Part shown: positions 4,708 to 25,557 of the stretch, in pieces
Position numbering within the stretch: the stretch's first letter is position 1
How the letters are laid out: each line of letters begins with the position of its first letter
Assembly: GCF_006345805.1 (NCBI RefSeq)
Contig: NW_021836049.1
Coordinates: 1-25,557 of the forward strand
Origin: Octopus sinensis
Taxonomy: Eukaryota
DNA: 25,557 nt
Direction: 5' to 3'
Notes under the pieces: generated by a model
The model's input: the letters and a program-made list of their open reading frames with translations, nothing else
What the model was told of the DNA's origin: nothing
Databases searched by the model: none
Program-made: the position numbers and the translations under genes

Positions 4708-6016
4708 TGTTGTTGCTGGTAATGTGCTACTGTTACTGTTGTGAAACGGTTATCCTTGCAGCTGCATCTGTTGTTAGTTTGGTTATTACAGTTATGGAAA
4801 TGGCACCATCAGTAATGTAGCCCTTCCTGCTTCACACTATTGCTGTGGATAGATTGCTTGTGTGTTTCTGCCTTCAACCACTGTGGATAAATTGCAATAC
4901 ATCTGAAAAATTAATCAGGTCCTTGATCACCTCCATACACTCATATTCTGTTTGGATCAATAGGTTCGTCTTTGTAACCTACCAATTGTCCTTCAACAGC
5001 TTCTTGAATTGCAATAGGTTCACTTTATTCTACATCATGCCAAACAATATCTACTAAGGAACAAATGTCTACTTCTAGAGGCCACCATTCTTTGTTCTGT
5101 TGAAGTAGATTGGAATGAGTTCGTCACTCTTTAAGATTGTAGTGGAGTACTTCTAGCCGCTTACTCGGTGAGAAATCTCACCATTACCGTGCTGAAATTG
5201 CTTCCTCAGGTGACATGAATTTTGGTTTCTAAAGACAGTTTCCATTTTGGTTTCAAGTCACGTTGAGTCACTACGCTGATTCTTCCCGATCACAAAGCAT
5301 TTCTAGTTATTTTCGTGCACGCCACCGAAAATTTTCCTCTACAATTGTATGGAAATTTAGCGAATAATATTTCCCGTACCCATGTACTGTGTCATAAAAT
5401 TATTAGTGGTTCTGTTGCGCAAAATCTCTGCATGCTTTTGAGCCACGACTTCAGTCTTAATAGTCACGCACTCGATGCCACAGGCTCTCCTCCACTCACT
5501 ATATATGATGCCAGACATGCCATCTTCCAGCGCATCATTTCATAGAGCCTTTCATTTCCATAGTAAAGCTATTCCATTATTTACACTTCTACAGATATTC
5601 TTCAGGCAAAGAGATAGTTCTTAAAAACTGAAAATCTACCCGAGCGAAATTTCTTTTACGCATGCATCTCTCGCTTGGCAGCGCTTCTGCTTGCACGTGA
5701 ATGGCGCTCGCATTGTGGATGTTGTTGTTGTTCTTCTTGTGGTGGTGGTGGTCGTCGTCGTTGTTTTTCATGATACGATGATGAGGCTTAGCGAATTTTC
5801 AAAATCATCTTTAAAAAAATATATGTATCTGAAAGCACAAAGTTTTCCTTCTCCAAAGGAAATGTAAACTGTTGTAAAACAGTTTTTTATTGCACTTCCC
5901 TATTACCTGTTTCTTTGAATGGTTAGGCGTTATTTAGCCGACTTGAAGGCAATACTCTAACGAAAATAGTCGAGCCTAAAGTGGACCAAATTAATACAGT
6001 TCTATATTTATGAGAT

Positions 6017-6332
6017 GTGGTGGCGCAATGGCCCTATGGTTAGGGCAGCGGACTCGCGGTCGGAGGATCGCGGTTTTGATTCCCAGACCGGGCGTTGTGT
6101 GTGTTTATTGAGCGAAAACACCTAAAGCTCCACGAGGCTCCGGCAGGGTGTGGTGGTGACCCCCTGTTGTACTCTTTCGCCACAACCTTCTCTTACTCTC
6201 TCTCTTCCTGTTTCTTGAGTAACGCTGAGATGGACTGGCGTCCCGTCCAGATGGTGGGAACACATACGCCACAGAAACCGGGAAACCGGGCCTATGAGCC
6301 TGGCTAGGCTTGAAAAGGGCGGCATAATAATA
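6017..6332 (+). mobile_element. SINE family A, tail type 3 (GATGGACTGGCGTCCCGTCCAG...; (ATA)n end)
   Basis: A-box TGGCCCTATGG, B-box-like GTTTTGATTCC; TSD ATATTTA(T/A)GAGAT at 6004-6016 and 6333-6345. Confidence 0.9.
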
Positions 6333-6546
6333 ATATTTAAGAGATAAGGAATTATGTACATTATTTACTGTAAATAATGAACCAAATTGTTTGAATAAAA
6401 TTGATATAAAGTTTGTTATTTATGAGAAACAATTAAATAATCAAATTCGCTTCGTAAAATGCGGTTTCGTGCAAAACCATATAAAGTTACTAATCCTCTT
6501 CCGTATAATATAGAGTTACACGAAAGAAAGGGTTTACTGGTTAATC

Positions 6547-7002: not shown

Positions 7003-7342
7003 CTGAGACCTCCTTCGATCATGACACAGACCATGGGGTTGCACCTAGAAAGTTACCCTCCAAGGCACTAGTCCGGGCAAGGTTGTTTGTGGAAGACCAG
7101 CAGTCGCCCATGCATACCAGCCTCCCCTCTCTTCGCCACCAGTGTTATCCAAGGGAAAGGCAAAGGGGCCGATACAGCTTGGCACCAGTGACTTTGTAAC
7201 TCATTTCTACAGCCGAGTGAACTGGAGCAACGTGAAATAAAGTGTCTTCCTCAAGAACACAACACGCAGCCCGGTCCGGGATTCGAGCTCACAACCTCAC
7301 GATCGTAAGCTCAACGCTCTAACCACTGAGCCATGCGCCTTC
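7003..7342 (-). mobile_element. SINE family B (tRNA head, CORE-like block, own tail)
   Basis: A-box TGGCTCAGTGG, B-box GCTCGAATCC; TTCAACACAATT flanks both ends (~6991-7002 and ~7340-7351), consistent with a TSD. Confidence 0.9.
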
Positions 7343-7638
7343 AACACAATTACCACCCAGTAACTTAACTCCCACCAATAAAGGTTGACATCAAATCCTC
7401 ACAACCTCACAACCTCACGATCGTAAGCTCGACGCTCTAACCACTGAGCCATGCGCCTTCAACACAATTACCACCCAGTAATTTAACTCCCACCAATAAA
7501 GGTTGACATCAAAACCTCACAACCTCACAACCTCACGATCGTAAGCTCGACGCTCTAAACACTGAGCCATGCGCCTTCAACACAATTACCACCACCCAGT
7601 AATTTAACTCCCACCAATAAAGGTTGACATCAAATCCT
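7343..7638. repeat. ~119-bp tandem repeat (2.5 copies): local flank plus 5' half of SINE B head
   Basis: Unit AACACAATTACCACCCAGTAA(C/T)TTAACTCCCACCAATAAAGGTTGACATCAAA(T/A)CC-TCACAACCTCACAACCTCACGATCGTAAGCTCGACGCTCTAA(C/A)CACTGAGCCATGCGCCTTC. Confidence 0.92.
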
Positions 7639-8369: not shown

Positions 8370-10600
8370 AATAAATTTGCTCCCTCGTACTCACACTGAA
8401 AATATACATACAGTAGGAGTTCAGTTTCATAGAGTCTATAATAAATAGATGTAGAAGATAGCATCATGCAATTTGAGGTTAAAACGAGTGACGTTTCAAC
8501 AATGAAAAAAGGAAATATATTAGAAAATAATCGGATATAAGACCACTTTACGACAATCATAAAACAAACAGAAACAAAAGGTTTGAAATATTTAGGTATA
8601 ACCGTGTGATAAAAAAGAAACTAGATTGCTTGTTCTGTTTTGATTTTTTTCTCTTAGAAAACCAAACTTCACAAGGTTAAAATTATATTTTTAATCTAAG
8701 TAAATGGTTCAAATATGAGTCTATCTATTAACTTATAGACCATATTTTCTTTGAAGTGTAGAGGGACATTCTTGAAACAATACAGAAGATAATGTTTGTT
8801 TAGATAGAAACGAACGAAAATCAATGAATATATATGGAACATTAGCGCACCCTAATGATGTTTATAGGATCTATATAGCCCATGAACAAGGAAAGAGAAA
8901 ATTGATTTGCTGTAAAATAGCATACATTGAGAGGAAGTAATAGAGTATATTACGTAAGAAATTGTATACTACTGGTGATGAACGAGATTAGGAAATCTGG
9001 AAAAATATAAGACTGGAGACTGGTACAGTACTACAGAACGTAACGACAGTGAATCATGGAAACGTGAAGAAGCCTTGGCTTGAAACATACATTTGATCAC
9101 GCTGGCAGGTGGATGGGCGGGTGGAGGGATGGATGGCTGGATGGAGGGAGGGAGGGAGGGACAGAGGGACGGATGGTTAGATGGAAGTTTGGACTAATGG
9201 ATAGATGGTTAGATGGAGAGATGGAGGGACGGACGGACGGGCGGATAGATGGAGGAAGGAATGGATAGATGGATGGATTGATGGAGTGACGGATGGTTAG
9301 ATGAAAGGATGGAGGGAGAAAGAGTGAGACGGATATATGAATGGATGGATCGATGGATGGTGGGATGGATGGATGCTGAGGTGGATGGAGTGACGGATGG
9401 TTAGATAGAGGGATGGGCTAACGGATGGAGGAACGGAGGGACGGACGGACGGATAGATGGAGGGATGGATAGATGGATAGATAGATTGATGGGGTGGCGG
9501 GTGGTTACATAGAGAGAAGGACTAATGGATGGAGGGGAAAAGGGAGAGAGGAAGGGAGGTGTTGACAGACGGACGGACGGGTAGATGGAAGGCGGGATCG
9601 ATGGATGGATGGAAGGATAGCTGGATAGTTGGATGGATGGATGGATGGATGGATGGATGGATGGATGGATTGACGGATGGTTAGATAGAGGGATGGGTTA
9701 ATGGATGGAGGGGCGGACGGACGGACGGAAGGGTAAATGCAGGGAGGGAGGGGTAGATGGATGAATGGATGGATAGATGGATGGAGGGATGGAGGAAGGA
9801 CGAATGGATGGAGGAAAGGTACATATTGGTGGGTGAATGGAGGGATGGATTGATAGATGGGCGGATGGATGGATGGATGAACGAACGGAAGGATACCAGC
9901 TATTGACGAAAATGAGATATCAGACCGAAAATGTGGTATTCACAGATGTAAAATTGATGAGAAGGGGAAGAAAAAAACCCATCAAATTTCATAATCACCG
10001 AATTCCCACGGAGTATCATACTATGTGACAACAAAAGCGAAGGTTTAACATATTGGATAAGTGAAAGCAGTAAATTAACTAGAAAGAAATATAAGGAGTC
10101 ACTTGGTATGGTTTCGCGTATGGTTCATTGGGAATTATGCGAAATGCATAATATTGAAAGAATTAAGTAAGGACGCCAACCTTTCCGTTTAATAAAGTGT
10201 AAAAACATCACAATCTTCAGGGATGTTAACAGTCAATGTGATTAGTTTACGGAAGGGGAGACCTGGTATATAAATATGAGAAAAATCGAGAGAATATTAA
10301 AGAACTGACATTGCATATAGAGAATTGGGACCAGAAAAAAAAGTGGAGAACATGAAAATTTTGTACATATTTGGTCACTAATGTTATTATTGATATAATT
10401 TCTTTGTAGGGTTTTCAATAGAATAAATAACATGTCAAGTGCAGTAGAAAGATAATTGTAATACATCTGGGGATAGGATCGACAATAGGGATGGTTTATA
10501 AGAGACTGGGTAAAAGATTATCTAACATAAGACATATAGAAATATTCGCAATACAGATATGAACTCGTGATATGGTAAACTGTAATGAAGACAAATAGTC
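8370..10600 (+). mobile_element. Ancient RLE-type (R4/Dong-like) non-LTR retrotransposon relic: RT C-terminus, CCHC knuckle and PD-(D/E)xK endonuclease, split by (GGAT)n
   Basis: Degenerate translations: MQFEVKTS..MKKG..KGLKYLGI (8468-8604); LDRNERKSMNIYGTLAHPNDVYRIYIAHEQGKRKLICC (~8800-8915); LCDNKSEGLTYWISESSKLTRKKYK...MVHWELCE (~10021-10143); TIFRDVNSQCD..RPG (~10210-10266). These match the known motifs YKYLGI, LDRKTRK..HPKSDVDRLY, C..C..ET..HI.SEC.KL..KEY..VHW.LC and ILWD.NIQCD..RRPDI. Many stops and frameshifts; ends approximate. Confidence 0.8.
9108..9893. repeat. Degenerate (GGAT)n purine-rich satellite, ~790 bp, with higher-order periodicity
   Basis: GGAT/GGAC/GGAG units; GACGGATGGTTAGAT recurs at ~9168, 9288, 9392 and 9673. 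Confidence 0.9.
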
Positions 10601-12429: not shown

Positions 12430-12819
12430 GTATTTATATATATGTGTTGTGTGTGTGTGTGTGTGTGTGTGGATGCGGTTGTATAAATACGTGTGTGACT
12501 GCACTTGTGATTTTCTGTGTATTTCACATAATAGCAAAGTGCTCGGCCTTGTTTATTCAGTATTATGTATATCACGCTAATTAAACAATGATATGTTTTC
12601 TTTGGATTAAACAAAGCCACGATAAAGCATTAAATATAATACATCTGGTGTATATTCTCCTCTGTTCATACGTTTTAATTATTAACTTGTAAATAGCACT
12701 CTCTATCCACAGACATATATATATATATACATGCATATATAAATAAATATATATATATTATATATATATATATATATAATATATATATATATATATTATA
12801 TATATATATATATATATGC

Positions 12820-12870
<51 letters not shown>

Positions 12871-12892
12871 TGCATACAAATACATGTAAGAT

Positions 12893-12972
<80 letters not shown>

Positions 12973-13088
12973 ATATATATATACATACATGTGTGCTTGT
13001 TTGCATATGTGTGTGTATATTTGCCTATATGAGCATATAATTTAATATATATGCATACATATACAAATATACAAATATGTATATATAT

Positions 13089-13137
<49 letters not shown>

Positions 13138-13345: not shown

Positions 13346-14432
13346 ACACGCAGGCACACACACACACACACATTCACATACGTACTTACGCAATCGCTCG
13401 CACACACCCCCACCCCAGTATTATATCTTATATATATATATATATACGTTTACATATGTAAGTGTAACTGTACATGTGCATGGTACTATGTGTGTCTTTG
13501 TGTCTCTGTCCGTTAATGCACATTTACATATGTTTATACATGTGTATTTACATATGTCTCAGTTTGTGTGCGTTGTATTATTATATATGGCTTGGAGTGT
13601 TTACATTTTTGTGAAACATATGCGATATATTTACAGTTATTTTACTTTAAGATTCCGTATATTTGCTCTATAATTTCTATTGTCTTAATTTCTACAATTC
13701 AAAGTGTCATATCTTCTATTTGTTTTGTTTACTTCGCTCTTCTTACGTTCACTATATGCATCTCTCTCTTTCTCTCTATTTCTGTATATATCTATGTATA
13801 TATATATATATATATATAATATATATTATATATATATATATATATATACATGTATATATATATATATACATGTATATATATATATATGTGTATGTATGTA
13901 TATATGTATATATATATATATATACATGTATATATATATATATATATGTGTATGTATATATATGTGTACACGTAAAAACATATGTATATGATTACATATA
14001 TATTCACATATATATATTTACATTTATGTATGTATGTATATATATATATTTATATATATATATTGTACTTATGTATACGCACTCCTGCATAACTGCATTC
14101 GCACGCATATACACAAGCATCTACAACAGAGGCACGCACACACACATATAAGGATGTATATACCCTTATATTTACATCGATATGAGTGTCTGTATATACA
14201 TACTGTATATGTACATACATATTCACACACACGCACAAACACACGCACACACATATATATACATATACATATGCATACTTCCACACACACACACACACAC
14301 ATATATATGTGTGTGTGTGCGTCTGTGTGTGTGCGCGTCTGTCTGTGTGCGTGTGTGCGTGTGTGTGTGCGACTGTGTGTGTGTGCGTCTGTGTGTGTGC
14401 ATGTGTGTGTGCGTCTGTGTGTGTGTGTGTGT
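12250..14432. repeat. Large compound microsatellite zone: (TA)n, (CA)n, (TG)n
   Basis: Near-continuous dinucleotide arrays at ~12250-12480, 12705-13135, 13281-13395 and 13790-14432. Confidence 0.95.
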
Positions 14433-16405: not shown

Positions 16406-16960
16406 TTTATTTCATCTAGTTTCAGCTCACGAACTGTGGTCATGCTGGGGCACCGCCATTTGGTGTTGCTACATGATTTTACTTCACGAATGCTTTTTAG
16501 CAATTGACATTTGGTGCATGAGTTTGATGCAGCTGCCCTCATCTGCACCTGCTGCCGCGAAGTTGGTTCATCTAGGACACCTGACAGGAAGAGGTCCAGC
16601 TTTATTTTGAAGACACCTACATCCACCCCAGGTCTCTCAGGTTCTTCGGGAGGATACTGAACAGCTGTGGATGTCTGAAGCCCAGGCTATCACAGTATCT
16701 TGTCATACACCTTGATGGCAAATTTGGAGTCCTTGGCACTATGCAGTGGCGCCTAGTTCTAGTATTTGTGTAACTCTCGATGTCAAAGTTTGGGACAAGT
16801 CCTTCCAGGATCTTCCAGATGTATGTTATGGCATATCTTTCTCGCCTACGCTCCAAGGAATAGAGTCTTAATCTCTTGAGTTTTTTCCAATAGCTTATAT
16901 GCTGCACAGAGTCTATCTTCTTCGTGTAGCTTCGATGGATTGCCTCAAGTTCTGAGCTAT
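16406..16960 (-). mobile_element. 5'-truncated CR1/L2-group LINE (ORF2 C-terminus and 3' UTR)
   Basis: ORF 16617-17003 encodes ELEAIHRSYTKKI..YWKKLKRLRLYSLERRRERYAITYIWKILEGLVPN, the typical CR1/L2-group C-terminus; continues after a frameshift into DVGVFKIKLDLFLSGV; 3' UTR ends GAAACTAGATGAAATAAAA. Confidence 0.9.
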
Positions 16961-17279
16961 ATAAGGTATAGCTTCTTTGATTAGAAAAATCATTGACTCT
17001 CATCTCTTAGTCTGGGGTTGTCGTGTGATGCCGTCACTGATAGGTGCTCAAAGATACCAAAATATTTTGACGATATTCGGTTACATATGTTGGTTCCAAA
17101 TTATTCCACCAGTGGAGAAAACTTTCTCTATTTATCTTTTGCTTAAATCCGTCATTTATTAATCAGGTGGAAGCTTTCTTAGCGTCGTCTGAACATTACA
17201 TTCTAGTGCCAATTTCAGCTTAATCTTTAGTCTTGTAATAGTTTCTGCTGCTGTTACTTTTTTTTCATTCTTCATTTTT

Positions 17280-19477: not shown

Positions 19478-20160
19478 ATATATATGTACTTATGTATACA
19501 CATCCATGTTCATGCAGTCACATGCAGACACATACACACACACACACACACACGCGCATACAAAACACCTATATTAGCACAATGTAGATCTGGGTGTTAT
19601 GTATTACAGTAGACATGACGGCTGTAGATTGTCACCGTTTAGCATGTTAATGTAGTTAAATTAAATTGTATATCTCACTGCATGATGATAATTAATTAAA
19701 GTAAGAATAACAATAATGCATATATATCTAATGTTAGATATATTATCGTATTAGATGATTTATTATTGCCGGTCTCTAACCTTTCGTACTCCAACAGCAT
19801 TTATATGCTCCTATAATCTTTCCTTAACTCCTATGTGAATCACTTATATCTTATGTATGTTTTTCTAATTGAAATATAAGTGTGGCACGTTCATTATACC
19901 TAACACGATAATAGACAGCGAATTTGCTGAAATAATAGAATCGTGGAAATGTTGCTGTGATATTTATCAAATACTAATTTCATCGCTAGCATATCGAGAT
20001 GGTACGTTGCGACATAGAAATATCCTGAGGCTTATTCAATCAACTACAAGAAAGACCTTACGTAATATATTTTAGGAAATTGGTTGTGAAATAATTTTCG
20101 TGATCCCGAATGTAGTAAGGCAATAGCTTGCATAATAATCCACGTGATGCCTTATGTGAT

Positions 20161-20550
20161 GTGGAGACGCAATGGCCCAGTGGTTAGGGCAGCGGACTCG
20201 CGGTCGTAGGATCGCGGTTTCGATTCCCAGACCGGGCGTTGTGAGTGTTTATTGAGCGAAAACACCTAAAGCTCTACGAGGCTCCGGCAGGGGATGGTGG
20301 TGATCCCTGCTGTACTCTTTCACCACAACTTTCTCTCACTCTTACTTCCTGTTTCTGTTGTACCTGTATTTCAAAGGGCCGGCCTTGTCACTCTCTGTGT
20401 CACGCTGAATATCCCCCAGAACTACGTTAAGGGTGCACGTGTCTGTGGAGTGCTCAGCCACTTACACGTTAATTTCACGAGCAGGCTGTTCCGTTGATTC
20501 GGATCAACCGGAACCCTCATCGTCGTAACCGACGGAGTGCTTCCATGTCC
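20161..20550 (+). mobile_element. SINE family A, tail type 1, intact
   Basis: A-box TGGCCCAGTGG, B-box-like GTTTCGATTCC; perfect 14-bp TSD ATGCCTTATGTGAT at 20147-20160 and 20551-20564. Confidence 0.95.
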
Positions 20551-20980: not shown

Positions 20981-21494
20981 GTTGCCTATAGTTAATATGT
21001 ATAAACTGTACGACAAAGTTTGTTTCTCCAGCTATATGATTGTAAAATACCCCGTAGTCCTTATACTAATATGCTACATGCTACAGCACGACTACAATGA
21101 AGTTAAAGGCGCGGATTCGTATCTGGACTTTTTTTTTTTATCCAATATCACGCTTATCAAACCGGAAGCGAAACAAGAACAAAAAACACAATGGCATACT
21201 AGGAAAAATATTTTGCTTCTATGTAACTTTTGACCTAGTTTCCTCTTGGAAACAAAATATAGGTTGAGTGTTCCCGTACCGATGTACATATAAACTTGAC
21301 AAAGCTAAACCCAGGGCCTCACAGTCCATACAGACGTTAAAAGACATTGGTATTTTCTTTTCCGTGACATTCTGGTGCAACGTTTGTAAAAACAGATCGT
21401 CTAAATACAGTTCCATATTTAAGAGATGAGGAATTATGTAGATTATTTACATTATTTACATTCGACGGATATTTGTCCTCAACTGTTTGTTGTT

Positions 21495-21542
21495 AACACA
21501 ACGTTTCGGCTGATATCCCCCCCCCAGCCTTCATCAGGTGTC
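21495..21542 (-). ncRNA. Minimal type I hammerhead-ribozyme-like motif
   Basis: Minus strand GACAC-CUGAUGA-A-GGCUG(loop)CAGCC-GAAA-CGU-U-GUGUU. Confidence 0.6.
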
Positions 21543-21589
21543 TTGGGGAAATTTCGAACCTGGGTTCTCATTCCTAAGGTATTTCTTGA

Positions 21590-21657
<68 letters not shown>

Positions 21658-21857
21658 TCACTGCCCGTGGACATATGGCGTATTGGTTAAGAGCGCGGGC
21701 TACTAACACCAAGATTCTGATTCCGATTCCATGCAGTGACCCGAATACTACTACTACTACTACTACTACTACTAATAATAATAATAATAATAATAATATT
21801 AATAATAACATCGAAAAATACCTTAGGAACGAGAACCCAGGTTCGAAATTTCCCCAA

Positions 21858-21908
21858 GACACCTGATGAAGGCTGTGGGGGGTGGGGTATCAGCCGAAAC
21901 GTTGTGTT
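21858..21908 (+). ncRNA. Minimal type I hammerhead-ribozyme-like motif
   Basis: GACAC (helix I) CUGAUGA A GGCUG...CAGCC (helix II) GAAA, palindromic ACGU (helix III), U17, GUGUU (helix I'). Confidence 0.6.
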
Positions 21909-22193
21909 AACAACAAACAAGATGAGGACAAATATCCGTCGAATGTAAATAATGTAAATAATGTAGATCATCAAAATCTTATGTAGTTTCTACATCCTGC
22001 GTAGTATTGCACGCTGTACTCCTCGATAATTTTCAAATTGAGAGCAGGGAATATAAACCTGATTGATTAGGACCGATCTCTGTTTAACCAAAGCAAAAAA
22101 ACAACTTTGTAACAGATTTACAATAGTGAACATAAATTTCATTTTAGTTTAATAACACGTGTATTTGCCAGTAGTTATTTTATAGTTTAATAA

Positions 22194-22513
22194 AGACTCC
22201 GCCGGTTACGACGACGAGGGTCCCAGCTGATACGATCAACGGACAGCTTGCTCGTGAAATTAACGTGCAAATGGCTGAGCATTCCACAGACACGTGTACC
22301 CTTAACGTAGTTCTCGGGATAATCAGCGTGACACAGAGAGTGTGTGACGCTGACCCTTTGAAATACAAGTACAACTCATTTTTGCCAGCTGAGTGGACTG
22401 GAGCAACGTGAAATAAAGTGTCTTGCTCAGGACACAACGCGTCGCCGGGAATCGAACTCACAACCTTACAATCATGAGCCGAATGCCCTAACCACTAAGC
22501 CACTCGCCCTCAC
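22194..22513 (-). mobile_element. SINE family D (B-like head and CORE-like block, family A type 1 tail)
   Basis: A-box TGGCTTAGTGG, B-box GTTCGATTCC; CCTGAGCAAGACACTTTATTTCACGTTGCTCCAG shared with SINE B; tail shared with 20161-20550; TSD ATAGTTTAATAA at 22182-22193 and 22514-22525. Confidence 0.92.
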
Positions 22514-23924
22514 ATAGTTTAATAACCAATATTATGGTCTACATGTCTCCGTGGTTGCTTCCCATACATACTGACGTAGTTATGTTGTGCATTTCTGGAA
22601 TACATTGGGCCACATGTTTACCTGAAGCAAAACGCAAATTGATCAATGATCCTGTTAATCGCGGCCCAGCATTTTAAGATATGGCACTGGTTAGTGTGAG
22701 GATAGGGTCGCAATACATAAAACTTAGATGAGATGACCAGGGTTCGAACAGGTTCGCTTAGGTGTATATTCAACAAAGTCTGACTTGCAGCTAAGCAACG
22801 ACGACAGCGACCAAGGCTACAACAGATACAACAAATCTGAAACCAAGAATATACTAATACAGTTTCCTTTTTTTTCTTCTTATTTCTTGAATTTTTGAAA
22901 CACAGAAAAATACAGGCAAAAAGTCATTTCGATATTTGACTTATTCTCCTAATATACGAGAACGGCATAAACGTTACAACACACAAACTTGGAATTCAAT
23001 AGGCCTGATTAGATAAGTTTATCATGAAAAGAAAAAAAAATTGTTTTTAATATTTAAGGAAGCATTACTCAATAAAAATCGAGAAGTCAATAAGTTTTTA
23101 TCCCATATTTTATCCATGCGTGGGATATATACATATTTCACAGCATATTTTTTTACATTTTTACTAATTTATATATTTTCCTAGTAACTTATCATTCCAC
23201 AACATCATTTTAAAAATAATACATATATAATTATTATTTAACTTATTTTGCTTTTTTTCTCTTTATTTATTTTAATAGTGGCATGTTTTTTAAGTTGTAT
23301 CATTTTCTATTTTTTTACTTTTTATTATTAATGTTATATTATATTTTCATATCGCCATGTTTTTCTCCACGTCTGGTGAATATTCCAGGCTGTCAGCGTT
23401 TCTTTATGTCTCATGCTGCTGTTGGGAGAATTAGCTGTTGTTATTGTTATAATAATTTATCATGTTCAGTGCGGTAACGGTTGTTATTGTGGCTGATGTT
23501 TGTCCATGTTAGTATTATTATATTTGTTGTTGCTGTTGCTGTTGTTGTGCTAGTTGTAGTTGATGATATTTTCGTCGTGTTCTACATGTGCAAGCATTCC
23601 CATACAACATACGATTCTGTGCTTCTAAAAAGAGAAACGCATACACACCTACATGCACAAGTACATACATATGTACACATGCATACACACGAAAATACAA
23701 ACACGCATACACACAAGCACACACACACATACACACACACACACATATGTATGGTTGTGTATGTATATATGTAATATAACTATGTAGATATGTATGTATA
23801 TTCTGTATGCATATATGTGCATACCTATGCAAATATATTCATATACATGTCCGTCTACACACATATATGCATACATGCGCATGTATGTATGTGTGTATAT
23901 ATATTGGGTGGGGGGAGAGACAGA

Positions 23925-23939
23925 TGGACAACAGATAGA

Positions 23940-23971
<32 letters not shown>

Positions 23972-24074
23972 TAGATAGATAGATAGATAGAGATAGATAG
24001 ATAGATAGAAAGATAGATAGATAGATATATAGATAGATAGATAGATAGATAGATAGACAGATATATATATATAT

Positions 24075-24126
<52 letters not shown>

Positions 24127-24165
24127 TAGATAGATAGATAGATAGATAGATAGGTAGGTAGATAG

Positions 24166-24185
<20 letters not shown>
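23925..24185. repeat. (GATA)n / (TA)n / (GA)n compound microsatellite
   Basis: Long GATA and GACA arrays, directly visible. Confidence 0.95.
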
Positions 24186-24198
<13 letters not shown>

Positions 24199-24675
24199 CA
24201 GAGAAAGAGTGAAGTGGGCAAGCGAACGTATAGGTAGATCGGTAAAAGAATGGATGCTAATAAAGATTGATATGAAGACGGACCTGGGAGGAAACAAAGT
24301 TTTCATATACAAACTGAAATATCGATAATACATACTGTGACATTATTCGTATAAACATCCATTGGCTGAAATCCGCTCTAAAACATAGGTACAAACGCAC
24401 AGCTAGATATACCTGCATACATATTCATTCGTACATGTGTGTTTTTGCATGTATTGCAAATTTCTATATTGTTACATAAATGTCCATCCATACGTTTCGT
24501 TATGTAAATATCTAGACACATACTGCCGCATGTTTATATGTTTAAAATTACATAAAATACAAATATTCATCTGACAGTCAGCGATCGTTTCTGAGTTCAT
24601 GACAACATGACTTATATATGCAACAAATATGATTACGAACACCCACAAACACTGACTTATGCATCCAAACACACA

Positions 24676-25078: not shown

Positions 25079-25474
25079 TATCAGGCTGAGTAAGAAGTAA
25101 GTAAGCAACGTTTTGAAACATTAAATTCATCAAAAAATATTTCAAAAACCGTGAAAAATTTTATTGATCAAAGTAAGTAAAATTACGATCAACAAATGTT
25201 TGCCAATGGGGGTTACAATTTTGTTTATTCTGCTAATATAAAAGTTCTGGAGTTCTGCAGCTGATGAACTCTTTCAACGCACTTTCAGCATGGGTTTTTT
25301 AATTATTTTTGAACTCCTTCTCTCGCAGGAAACCGTCAAGCTGCTTGAAAACATGGTAGTCGGTAGGAGAAACCTCTGGGGAATAAGCTGAGTAGGGAAG
25401 AACTTCGTAACCAAGTTCCCTCAACTTCTGGAGCGTTATTAATGGTCGAACAATATTATGAAGTATTTTTGACC
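25079..25474 (-). mobile_element. Mariner transposase relic (C-terminal catalytic part and degenerate terminal repeat)
   Basis: Minus strand LHNIVRP.TLQKLRELGYEVLPYSAYSPEVSPTDYHVFKQLDGFL..EF resembles Hsmar1-type HDNARP..YSPDLSPTDYHFFKHLDNFL; TA-TCAGGCTGAG.AAG..AAGTAA at 25079 resembles a mariner TIR. Confidence 0.85.
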
Positions 25475-25557
25475 CTATGAAGAAAGGATGAGGACGCTCG
25501 AACTTTATTCTCTAGAAAAACGCTGCCGCCGTGGTGATCTCATTCTCGCCCACAGCA
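25473..25557 (+). mobile_element. CR1/L2-group LINE fragment abutting the mariner (runs off the window)
   Basis: PYEERMRTLELYSLEKRCRRGDLILAH matches the YEERL..L.LYSLE.RR.RGDLI motif. Confidence 0.75.

What the first reader, a model, noticed from the sequence alone, without database searches (positions are those of the whole stretch)
21403..21965. tRNA-headed SINE-like element with a minimal hammerhead-ribozyme tail, present as an inverted duplication: candidate Penelope-mobilised 'ribozyme SINE'
Seen: a Pol III-type head (21669-21741), then a trinucleotide array, then a tail containing GACAC-CUGAUGA-A-GGCUG..CAGCC-GAAA-CGU-U-GUGUU (21858-21908). This places the hammerhead core boxes correctly, with a 5-bp helix I (one G-U pair), a 5-bp helix II and a minimal palindromic ACGU helix III. 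A second copy lies on the minus strand (21495-21542); its helix II loop differs but the stems and core are unchanged. Established: Penelope-like elements carry minimal type I hammerheads with a palindromic helix III thought to cleave as dimers, often insert with inverted terminal duplications, and Schistosoma SM-alpha joins Pol III boxes to a hammerhead. Inference: this is a non-autonomous, Pol III-driven, possibly self-processing retroposon using Penelope machinery. Caveats: an extra A after A9 and U at position 17 may weaken or abolish cleavage.
Basis: partly seen in the sequence, partly recalled or inferred. Interest (0 to 1): 0.85.

Follow-up and report, generated by a model that had tools for sequence, protein, structure and literature searches.

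The report
Penelope-type hammerhead retroelement, inverted double insertion
This is a 563-base non-coding retrotransposon insertion of the Penelope-like kind, made of two head-to-head copies that each carry the minimal hammerhead ribozyme typical of those elements; it is a clear example of something already known, and its suggested tRNA-like "SINE head" is not established.

Summary
The hammerhead observation is real. A minimal type I hammerhead (HHR) descriptor hits the window only at +21858-21908 and -21495-21542, and never in 400 shuffles. The motif has the published hallmarks of Penelope-like-element (PLE) min-HHRs: a short helix I, an unpaired base between A9 and G10.1, a G10.1-C11.1 pair and a palindromic ACGU helix III.

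Nine metagenome contigs share the core, their helix II covaries, and four encode RT and/or GIY-YIG ORFs.

The unit is 21402-21964, flanked by an 8-bp target-site duplication. It consists of:
- a 40-nt one-sided "tail";
- an inverted 5'-truncated copy;
- a longer plus-strand copy.

A second insertion of the same family (5993-6380, exact 8-bp duplication) holds only the tail and about 10 nt of each inverted 3' end. This matches the published PLE signature of 5' truncation, inverted pairs and an optional 30-40 bp tail.

The "Pol III head" has only an A-box-like 10/11 match. It has no B box within 2 mismatches and no convincing cloverleaf. No other copies could be retrieved, so "SINE" remains unproven.

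Verdict: a new member of a known kind, of modest interest.

The parts
21394..21401 (.). Left copy of the target-site duplication, AGATCGTC
   Evidence: It matches AGATCATC at 21965-21972 in 7 of 8 positions, exactly at the boundaries set by homology with locus 2. Random boundary pairs in this window reach >=7/8 with P=0.024.
21402..21441 (-). 40-nt 'tail' extension, present only 3' of the minus-strand copy
   Evidence: It lies outside the inverted repeat but inside the TSD. The same sequence recurs at locus 2 (5993-6016 plus 6346-6359) at about 90% identity. It corresponds to the optional 30-40 bp one-sided PLE tail (PMC8557442, PMC11167929).
21442..21664 (-). Inverted, 5'-truncated copy (left arm). 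Its 3' end is (GTAAATAAT)x2
   Evidence: Inverted-repeat pairs I1, I7 and I13 and alignment A1.
21495..21542 (-). Minimal type I hammerhead, minus-strand copy. The predicted cut lies between 21500 and 21499
   Evidence: Descriptor hit. The core and stems are identical to the plus copy.
21592..21653 (.). (TTA)20.7 microsatellite, the reverse complement of the (TAA)n in the right arm
   Evidence: TRF. It lies inside the inverted repeat.
21656..21664 (.). GGTCACTGC, the inner 9-nt inverted repeat partner of 21733-21741. It marks the junction or turning point of the two copies
   Evidence: Pair I2, alignment columns 1-13 and the fold.
21665..21732 (+). It holds an A-box-like motif at 21676-21686 and a weak B-box-like motif at 21720-21730
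   Evidence: No other copy exists in the window. Orientation is assigned only from the A-box-like motif.
21733..21964 (+). Plus-strand copy (right arm): GCAGTGACC, (TAC)9.7(TAA)12, 3' domain, (GTAAATAAT)x2 plus GT
21858..21908 (+). Minimal type I hammerhead, plus-strand copy: GACAC / CUGAUGA / A / GGCUG-loop15-CAGCC / GAAA / CG / U / U / GUGUU. The predicted cut lies between 21903 and 21904
   Evidence: Descriptor hit with 0/400 shuffles. Helix II covaries in PLE-linked relatives. The bare motif's MFE contains helices I and II.
21909..21946 (+). AC-rich stretch and small predicted hairpin between the hammerhead and the 3' ends. It is a candidate RT-recognition or initiation region
   Evidence: Fold. 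Its role is inferred by analogy with the AC-rich stem-loop of the anole PLE (PMC11167929) and was not tested.
21965..21972 (.). Right copy of the target-site duplication, AGATCATC
5985..6388 (-). Locus 2, a second insertion of the same family. TSD ACCAAATT lies at 5985-5992 and 6381-6388. The element (5993-6380) consists of the tail plus ATTATTTAC-T-GTAAATAATGA, 59 nt in all, interrupted by a nested tRNA-SINE (6017-6332) that has its own TSD ATATTTAWGAGAT
   Evidence: The 8/8 TSD has P=0.006 for random boundaries.

Best explanation
The feature is one retrotransposition product, 563 bp long (21402-21964), non-coding and flanked by an 8-bp target-site duplication. It was made by the machinery of a Penelope-like element (PLE: a telomerase-like RT plus a GIY-YIG endonuclease) acting in trans on a short hammerhead-bearing RNA.

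Proposed steps:
1. The endonuclease cuts both strands of an AT-rich target about 8 bp apart (inferred from the TSD).
2. Each 3' end primes reverse transcription inside the RNA's 3' region at one of two alternative start sites about 38 nt apart. This gives one copy with the 40-nt tail (left, minus strand) and one without it (right, plus strand). This step is inferred from the two kinds of 3' end, which are identical at both loci.
3. The two cDNAs stop at different points and are joined head to head. Here the join is at a 9-nt inverted microhomology (21656-21664 / 21733-41), which creates the long inverted repeat with a 68-nt unique centre. At locus 2 both cDNAs were tiny.
4. The hammerheads are the PLE-type minimal type I form, which has no closed helix III. 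They could cleave only as a dimer or with protein help. They are carried along because reverse transcription starts downstream of them on uncleaved RNA. They more likely belong to the 3' module recognised by the RT than act as a processing device for this copy.

The template's identity is open. It was either a dedicated ~310-350-nt non-autonomous family (my slight preference) or a 5'-truncated part of an autonomous PLE.
For: Motif:
- There are two descriptor hits in the window and none in 400 shuffles.
- All four published PLE min-HHR hallmarks are present (PMC4209133).
- A scan with the core pattern found 9 metagenome contigs. All have the extra A, and helix II covaries: pair 1 is always G-C, pairs 2-4 show 3-4 Watson-Crick types, and there are no mismatches.
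- Four of those contigs carry PLE-type ORFs: GIY-YIG in L002, L005 and weakly L006, RT in L005 and weakly L007, with the HHR 200-470 nt upstream of the first ORF.

Insertion anatomy:
- The TSDs are AGATCGTC/AGATCATC at locus 1 and ACCAAATT/ACCAAATT at locus 2.
- The 40-nt tail lies on one side only and is shared by both loci.
- Both loci have the same two 3' termini.
- The inverted arms are about 96% identical, and 3 of their 7 differences are CpG decay.

Literature:
- PLE insertions show heavy 5' truncation, an adjacent inverted 5'-truncated copy and a one-sided 30-40 bp tail (PMC8557442).
- A purified PLE protein cuts and extends both strands and starts RT at two internal sites that delimit the tail, downstream of the HHR (PMC11167929).
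- Dual min-HHRs 100-700 bp apart on opposite strands are already described (PMC4209133).
Against: - No PLE ORF lies in the window (tblastn E>=0.5; ORF list), so no partner element sharing the 3' module could be shown.
- Only two insertions of the family are available, and one is 59 nt long.
- No further copies were found in any searchable collection.
- Conservation of the HHR stems and core between the arms (0 changes in 36 nt against about 1.5 expected) is not significant.
- Rfam hammerhead models do not hit the motif even at E<=10.
- In 147 nt of context the HHR fold is 6.5 kcal/mol worse than the MFE.
- The two-cDNA model cannot be separated from a model in which the whole palindrome is the transcribed unit.
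Confidence: 0.75

Rival explanations
1. The plus-strand unit (about 21656-21964) is a dedicated tRNA-derived SINE. It is transcribed by Pol III from internal A and B boxes in the head, carries a captured PLE 3' module, is mobilised by a PLE and processes itself with the hammerhead.
For: - An A-box-like motif lies at 21676-21686 with 1 mismatch. Its start is 44 nt from the start of the best B-like motif, the same spacing as in the window's real tRNA-SINEs.
- The unit is about 309 nt (347 with the tail) and 39.5% GC, with no TTTT run on the sense strand.
- A 9-bp acceptor-like stem closes the head.
- The microsatellite and head do not look like coding or typical pLTR sequence.
- Non-autonomous PLE derivatives are documented (PMC6685494; PMC8557442; bioRxiv 10.64898/2026.07.22.740005).
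Against: - No B box is found within 2 mismatches.
- ARAGORN sees a cloverleaf only at a threshold that gives 82 calls per window, and the D, anticodon and T stems are poor. Resident SINE heads pass the stricter threshold.
- The 9-bp stem is equally well explained as the junction of the inverted copies.
- Only one copy of the head exists, so a defined 5' end cannot be shown.
- Absence of TTTT is expected by chance in roughly a third of such sequences.
- Cleavage would separate the head from the RT start sites.
Confidence: 0.25
2. Both arms are ordinary 5'-truncated copies of an autonomous PLE, that is, pLTR fragments. The central segment and the microsatellite are simply part of that element's pseudo-LTR, and there is no separate non-autonomous family.
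For: - Heavy 5' truncation is the rule for PLEs, and most genomic min-HHRs are solitary truncated copies (PMC8557442; PMC4209133).
- Locus 2 shows extreme truncation in this very family.
- In the metagenome PLEs the HHR sits in non-coding sequence 200-470 nt upstream of the ORF, so about 200 nt upstream of an HHR need not be coding.
Against: - No PLE coding sequence lies in or near the element.
- The longer copy ends at a hairpin-forming 9-mer rather than at an arbitrary point.
- The sequence downstream of the HHR has no ORF. The AUG inside CUGAUGA opens only 14 codons.
Confidence: 0.3
3. The whole palindrome is the unit. It is transcribed from the minus strand with the tail at the 3' end and copied by single-ended target-primed reverse transcription. 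Locus 2 arose when the RT jumped across the base of the RNA hairpin.
For: - Both loci share both termini.
- A 220-bp RNA hairpin would favour such a template jump.
- The arms differ by 4% and by (TAC)9 against (TAA), which could reflect divergence within a master copy.
Against: - It needs a new mechanism, whereas the documented PLE behaviour already explains both loci.
- CpG decay in the arms fits divergence after insertion.
Confidence: 0.1
4. It is a foldback element or MITE, that is, a DNA transposon with about 220-bp terminal inverted repeats that happens to contain hammerhead-like boxes. Alternatively it is an assembly foldback artefact.
For: A long inverted repeat with a short GTAG direct repeat at the repeat tips.
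Against: - The TSD-defined termini are asymmetric: TAAATACAG... against ...AATAATGT, with the 40-nt tail on one side only.
- Both loci have 8-bp TSDs outside the tail.
- Locus 2 keeps the tail with only 9-12 nt of each tip.
- The arms differ by 4% and in repeat type, so this is not a read-level artefact.
- The HHR is not a chance motif.
Confidence: 0.03

Closest known systems
Minimal type I hammerheads of Penelope-like elements (Cervera & de la Pena 2014, PMC4209133; Lunse et al. 2017, as cited in PMC7761336)
   Same: It has the CUGAUGA...GAAA core and a 5-bp helix I. It has an unpaired base between A9 and G10.1, a G10.1-C11.1 pair and a palindromic ACGU in place of a closed helix III. It occurs as a solitary motif and as a pair on opposite strands 100-700 bp apart.
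   Different: Loop 2 is an unusually long G-run (10-15 nt, against 4-6 nt in the relatives I retrieved), and helix II is 5-6 bp rather than 7-8. Activity was not tested.
PLE insertion architecture (Craig et al. 2021, PMC8557442; Frangieh et al. 2024, PMC11167929)
   Same: It shows 5' truncation, an inverted 5'-truncated copy abutting a longer copy, and an optional one-sided tail of 30-40 bp. Its 3' ends lie a few tens of nt downstream of the HHR. The target is AT-rich and duplicated.
   Different: There is no ORF and no direct pseudo-LTR. The longest copy is only about 310 nt. One insertion of the family is just 59 nt.
Non-LTR retrozymes (Cervera & de la Pena 2020, PMC7229834; Li et al. 2026, bioRxiv 10.64898/2026.07.22.740005)
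   Same: It is a non-coding unit of about 300 nt with low GC and a type I HHR, thought to depend on PLEs. Solo 'monomers' are described.
   Different: Retrozymes are defined by direct tandem repeats that yield circRNAs, and most invertebrate ones carry canonical HHRs that cleave efficiently. Here the copies are inverted, not tandem, and the HHR is the minimal form.
Schistosoma Sm-alpha (cited in PMC4209133; the details of its Pol III boxes are from my own knowledge)
   Same: It is a short interspersed element that combines tRNA-like promoter boxes with a hammerhead.
   Different: Sm-alpha has a canonical HHR with loop-loop contacts and clear A and B boxes. Here the boxes are doubtful and the HHR is the PLE minimal type.
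Short non-autonomous Penelope elements (Heliconius, PMC6685494; Chlamys MRC1, PMC8557442)
   Same: They are non-coding derivatives that share 3' ends with autonomous PLEs and form tandem or inverted structures.
   Different: No partner PLE could be shown here. A small-RNA-derived head is not reported for those families in the passages I read.

Membership tests
PLE-type minimal type I hammerhead | Conserved core: C3-U4-G5-A6-N7-G8-A9, G12-A13-A14, U16.1-H17 | tested here: met
   CUGAUGA ... GAAA ... U-U is present on both strands.
PLE-type minimal type I hammerhead | Short helix I (4-5 bp) formed by the 5' and 3' flanks | tested here: met
   GACAC/GUGUU, 5 bp with one G-U pair.
PLE-type minimal type I hammerhead | [quoted passage not shown] | tested here: met
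   An extra A followed by G...C. The same is seen in all 9 metagenome relatives. The hallmark is stated in PMC4209133.
PLE-type minimal type I hammerhead | Palindromic 15.2-16.2 with no closed helix III, giving dimer potential | tested here: met
   A15.1-C-G-U16.1 reads ACGU, which is self-complementary.
PLE-type minimal type I hammerhead | Compensatory changes in helices among copies of the family | tested here: inconclusive
   Helix II covaries across 8 distinct stems from different PLE families. Helix I was fixed by my search pattern, and no same-family copies were available beyond the two arms, which are identical in the stems.
PLE-type minimal type I hammerhead | Self-cleavage as a dimer or with protein assistance | not testable with these tools
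   This needs in vitro transcription. Folding shows only that the bare motif can form helices I and II.
Penelope-like element (autonomous) | A single ORF with a telomerase-like RT and a GIY-YIG endonuclease | tested here: not met
   No such ORF lies in the element or anywhere in the window. It is present in metagenome relatives L002 and L005-L007.
Penelope-like element (insertion signature) | An inverted 5'-truncated copy adjacent to a longer copy | tested here: met
   The arms are 21442-21664 (-) and 21733-21962 (+). Locus 2 has 9-12 nt of each.
Penelope-like element (insertion signature) | An optional 30-40 bp tail at one end only | tested here: met
   A 40-nt tail lies at 21402-21441 inside the TSD. 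It is shared with locus 2 and absent from the right end.
Penelope-like element (insertion signature) | Direct pseudo-LTRs from partial tandem copies | tested here: not met
   No direct repeat of the arms was found.
tRNA-derived SINE (SINE2) | Internal Pol III A box and B box at tRNA-like spacing | tested here: inconclusive
   The A box matches 10/11 at 21676-21686. No B box is found within 2 mismatches, and the best candidate, 44 nt downstream, has 3.
tRNA-derived SINE (SINE2) | A recognisable tRNA-like cloverleaf in the head | tested here: not met
   ARAGORN detects the resident SINE heads at the 80% threshold. It detects this segment only at 70%, which is noise level, and with poor stems. 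The Rfam tRNA model is uninformative because the control head is also missed.
tRNA-derived SINE (SINE2) | Many copies with a common 5' end, and a 3' tail shared with an autonomous partner | not testable with these tools
   The source genome is not in any searchable collection.
Non-LTR retrozyme | Direct tandem repeats, each with an HHR, giving circRNA | tested here: not met
   The copies are inverted, not tandem. The unit size (309-347 nt) and GC (39.5%) fit. circRNA formation is not testable.
MITE / foldback DNA transposon | Terminal inverted repeats directly abutting the TSD | tested here: not met
   The TSD-defined ends are asymmetric because of the one-sided 40-nt tail.

The most novel reading that the evidence does not exclude
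The plus-strand unit would be a true tRNA-derived, Pol III-transcribed SINE that has captured the 3' recognition module of a Penelope-like element (the min-HHR plus the two RT start sites). That would make it a SINE whose autonomous partner is a PLE rather than a LINE. The head's acceptor-like stem would supply the microhomology that joins the two cDNAs.
Probability: 0.2. Interest if true: 0.6.

Novelty: new member of a known kind. Interest (0 to 1): 0.3.

Why it matters
Minimal hammerheads occur in the thousands in many animal genomes, and their role in Penelope-like elements is still unsettled. This locus adds no new principle.

It is, however, an unusually legible in-genome record of how PLE machinery inserts:
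- Two insertions of one family lie in 25 kb.
- Both are bounded by target-site duplications.
- Both have the same two alternative 3' ends about 38 nt apart.
- One is 563 bp long and the other 59 bp.

This agrees with the in vitro finding that a PLE protein primes on both DNA strands from two internal RNA sites. If the central segment proved to be a functional Pol III head, it would show that PLEs, like LINEs, have SINE partners.

Tried and rejected
**RNA-family and tRNA tools**
- Rfam at gathering threshold and at E<=10 on the region gave no hammerhead or tRNA hit. The few weak hits (CrcZ, snoRNAs, a CRISPR repeat) are low-complexity or chance matches.
- The Rfam tRNA model also misses the window's genuine tRNA-SINE head, so I dropped it as a test.
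- ARAGORN at default settings found no tRNA. Lowered thresholds were used only for comparison.

**Search for more family copies**
- A six-frame chimera of the arms found nothing in the 5.8-billion-protein collection.
- Exact look-ups of two window ORFs found nothing on record.
- The LINE and mariner fragments found only relatives of <=70% identity on ~1-kb contigs, which are useless for recovering same-species DNA.
- DNA pattern scans of viral and prokaryote-genome collections gave 0 hits.
- The single metagenome scan found other PLE families, not this one.

**Other checks**
- A literature search for resident-SINE and HHR strings found only an irrelevant primer match.
- Lunse et al. 2017 is not held.

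**Explanations rejected**
- Chance motif: 0 of 400 shuffles gave a hit.
- DNA-transposon or MITE: the ends inside the TSD are asymmetric.
- Assembly foldback: the arms differ by 4% and in repeat type.
- Selection on the HHR inferred from arm-to-arm conservation: 0 changes against 1.5 expected is not significant.

No step had to be referred.
Full report
**1. The observation**

The window is AT-rich (38% GC) animal-type DNA, full of microsatellites and tRNA-derived SINEs.

I wrote a descriptor for a minimal type I hammerhead. It requires:
- helix I of at least 4 bp;
- CUGANGA;
- 0-1 extra nt;
- helix II of at least 4 bp, opening with G-C;
- GAAA;
- a self-complementary helix III;
- U then H.

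It finds exactly two hits, at +21858-21908 and -21495-21542. It finds none in 400 dinucleotide-preserving shuffles of the window.
- Helix I is GACAC/GUGUU.
- CUGAUGA is followed by an extra A.
- Helix II is GGCUG/CAGCC, closed by a G-rich loop of 15 nt (10 nt in the minus copy).
- GAAA is followed by ACGU.
- The predicted cut follows U21903.

The trinucleotide arrays are real. The two copies sit in a long inverted repeat with arms at 21442-21664 and 21733-21962 and a unique 68-nt centre. Outside the microsatellites the arms differ by 7 substitutions and 2 indels in about 165 nt. Three of the substitutions are CpG decay. Inside the hammerhead, only loop 2 differs. Zero changes in the 36 nt of stems and core, against about 1.5 expected, is not evidence of selection.

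**2. The hammerhead's type**

Cervera and de la Pena (PMC4209133) list the features that recur in the minimal hammerheads of Penelope-like elements (PLEs):
- helix I of 4-5 bp;
- a conserved G10.1-C11.1 pair;
- palindromic 15.2-16.2, so that helix III forms only in a dimer.

All are present here. U17 is an allowed H.

The same paper already reports pairs of such motifs 100-700 bp apart on opposite strands. It also reports low activity in vitro.

A scan of metagenome contigs with ACACCTGATGA-N15-45-GAAACGTTGTGT returned nine contigs.
- All have the extra A.
- Helix II covaries across eight distinct stems. Pair 1 is always G-C, pairs 2-4 show three or four Watson-Crick types, and there are no mismatches.
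- Four of the contigs carry PLE-type ORFs: GIY-YIG in L002, L005 and weakly L006, RT in L005 and weakly L007. The hammerhead lies 200-470 nt upstream of the first ORF.

Their flanks are unrelated to the window's element. They validate the ribozyme type, not the family.

Rfam's hammerhead models do not hit the motif even at E<=10. My inference is that these models expect a closed helix III.

The bare 51-nt motif folds into helices I and II (-11.5 kcal/mol MFE against -10.9 for the pure hammerhead fold). In 147 nt of context an alternative fold is 6.5 kcal/mol better. That fold pairs the G-run of loop 2 with the CCCC upstream. This fits the published weak, dimer- or protein-dependent activity.

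**3. The true unit and a second insertion**

The 40 nt to the left of the inverted repeat (21402-21441) recur at 5993-6016 plus 6346-6359. There they are split by a nested tRNA-SINE that has its own 13-bp duplication.

At that second locus the 40 nt are followed only by ATTATTTAC-T-GTAAATAATGA. That is 9-12 nt of each tip of the inverted repeat.

Both loci are bounded by direct repeats placed exactly at the limits of homology:
- AGATCGTC / AGATCATC around 21402-21964;
- ACCAAATT / ACCAAATT around 5993-6380.

Random boundary pairs in this window reach 7/8 and 8/8 matches with probabilities of 0.024 and 0.006.

So the mobile unit is tail plus inverted pair. Its ends are asymmetric. The same two 3' termini, about 38 nt apart, occur at both loci:
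- ...GTAAATAATG(T/A) on one strand;
- ...AACTGTATT(TA) on the other.

**4. Mechanism**

These features are the published signature of PLE insertions.
- PLE insertions show heavy 5' truncation, an inverted 5'-truncated copy next to a longer one, and a 30-40 bp tail at one end only (PMC8557442).
- A purified PLE protein cuts and extends both DNA strands. It starts reverse transcription at two internal RNA sites that delimit the tail, downstream of the hammerhead. It uses uncleaved RNA, and the hammerhead cleaves only with protein present (PMC11167929).

I therefore read locus 1 as two cDNAs primed from the two ends of a staggered break. The left one started at the distal site and so carries the tail. 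The right one started at the proximal site. They were joined head to head at a 9-nt inverted microhomology (GGTCACTGC/GCAGTGACC). Locus 2 is the same event with two very short cDNAs.

Shown:
- the motif;
- the duplications;
- the one-sided tail;
- the shared termini;
- the inverted arms.

Inferred:
- the double priming;
- the joining step;
- the dependence on a PLE enzyme.

The cut site lies 61-99 nt upstream of the 3' termini. Self-cleavage would therefore detach the body from its priming region. The hammerhead is thus more likely part of the 3' module bound by the RT than a processing device for this copy.

**5. The 'SINE head'**

The central segment has an A-box-like TGGCGTATTGG with 1 mismatch. 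There are 17 such hits in the window against 7 expected, and most lie in resident SINEs.

The best B-like motif lies 44 nt downstream, which is the tRNA spacing. It has 3 mismatches to the consensus, and nothing passes at 2 or fewer.

ARAGORN recovers the resident SINE heads at its 80% threshold. It recovers this segment only at 70%, where it makes 82 calls in the window, and the proposed stems are poor.

The 9-bp 'acceptor' stem is equally well explained as the junction of the two copies.

The unit's size (309-347 nt), low GC and lack of TTTT are compatible with a SINE or a retrozyme-like element but are not diagnostic.

No second copy of the head exists in the window. I could reach no same-species sequence. 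I therefore cannot tell a dedicated non-autonomous family from 5'-truncated copies of an autonomous PLE. I lean slightly to the former.

**6. Comparison and verdict**

The ribozyme is a member of the PLE min-HHR class. All sequence-level criteria are met, and activity was not tested.

The insertion carries the PLE signature, but it is not an autonomous PLE. It has no ORF, and no PLE coding sequence lies in the window.

It is not a retrozyme in the strict sense, because it has no direct tandem repeat. It fails the tests for a MITE.

Non-autonomous PLE derivatives are already known (PMC6685494, PMC8557442, bioRxiv 10.64898/2026.07.22.740005).

This is a new member of a known kind. Its interest is modest, apart from the unusually clear pair of insertions and the unproven possibility of a PLE-dependent SINE.

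Noticed in passing
window ~1817(+), 4703(-), 6021(+), 11202(+), 19214(+), 20173(+): There are at least six copies of a tRNA-derived SINE family. Its A box is TGGCYCAGTGG and its B box GTTTCGATTCC, 44 nt apart, followed by a shared core (GAGCGAAAACACCTAAAGC...) and varied 3' modules.
   Followed up: partly
window 22150-22520(-), 20380-20540(+), 2438-2698: A second SINE-like family has a different tRNA-like head at 22502(-). Its 3' module (...CACGTTAATTTCACGAGCA...CGTCGTAACCG...) is shared with the copy starting at 20148. It lies about 200 bp to the right of the hammerhead element.
   Followed up: no
window 6004-6345: A tRNA-SINE (6017-6332, tail (AAT)3) is nested inside the 40-nt tail of the second PLE-type insertion. 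It has its own 13-bp target duplication, ATATTTAWGAGAT. This shows that the mini-insertion is older than the SINE insertion.
   Followed up: yes
window 7288-7638: A 118-bp unit is repeated 2.9 times in tandem at 96% identity. Each unit contains a SINE-head-like A box on the minus strand.
   Followed up: no
window 9110-9879: A degenerate (TGGA)n-like array runs for 770 bp. Long (AT)n, (AC)n and (AGAT)n arrays occur elsewhere, for example at 12715-13134, 13785-14063 and 23933-24202.
   Followed up: no
window 16620-17006(-): A 129-aa open frame resembles the C-terminal part of a LINE reverse-transcriptase ORF. Database relatives are at most 70% identical, and one carries Pfam RVT_1. Pfam gives no hit for the fragment itself.
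   Followed up: partly
window 25302-25511(-): A 70-aa open frame contains ...LPYSAYSPEVSPTDYHVFKQL..., which I recall as typical of the C-terminus of mariner/Tc1 transposases. Pfam gives no hit.
   Followed up: no
L001:1199-1535 versus L002 and L003: In one metagenome contig, the homology to its PLE relatives begins exactly at the 5' edge of the hammerhead. This suggests a copy whose 5' end coincides with the ribozyme.
   Followed up: no
window 21840-21850(+) and 21550-21560(-): Each arm has a better B-box-like motif (GGTTCGAAATT, 2 mismatches) than the 'head' does. It lies 8 nt upstream of helix I (18 nt start to start), in a run of small palindromes (GAACCCAGGTTC, TTCGAA, GAAATTTC).
   Followed up: no
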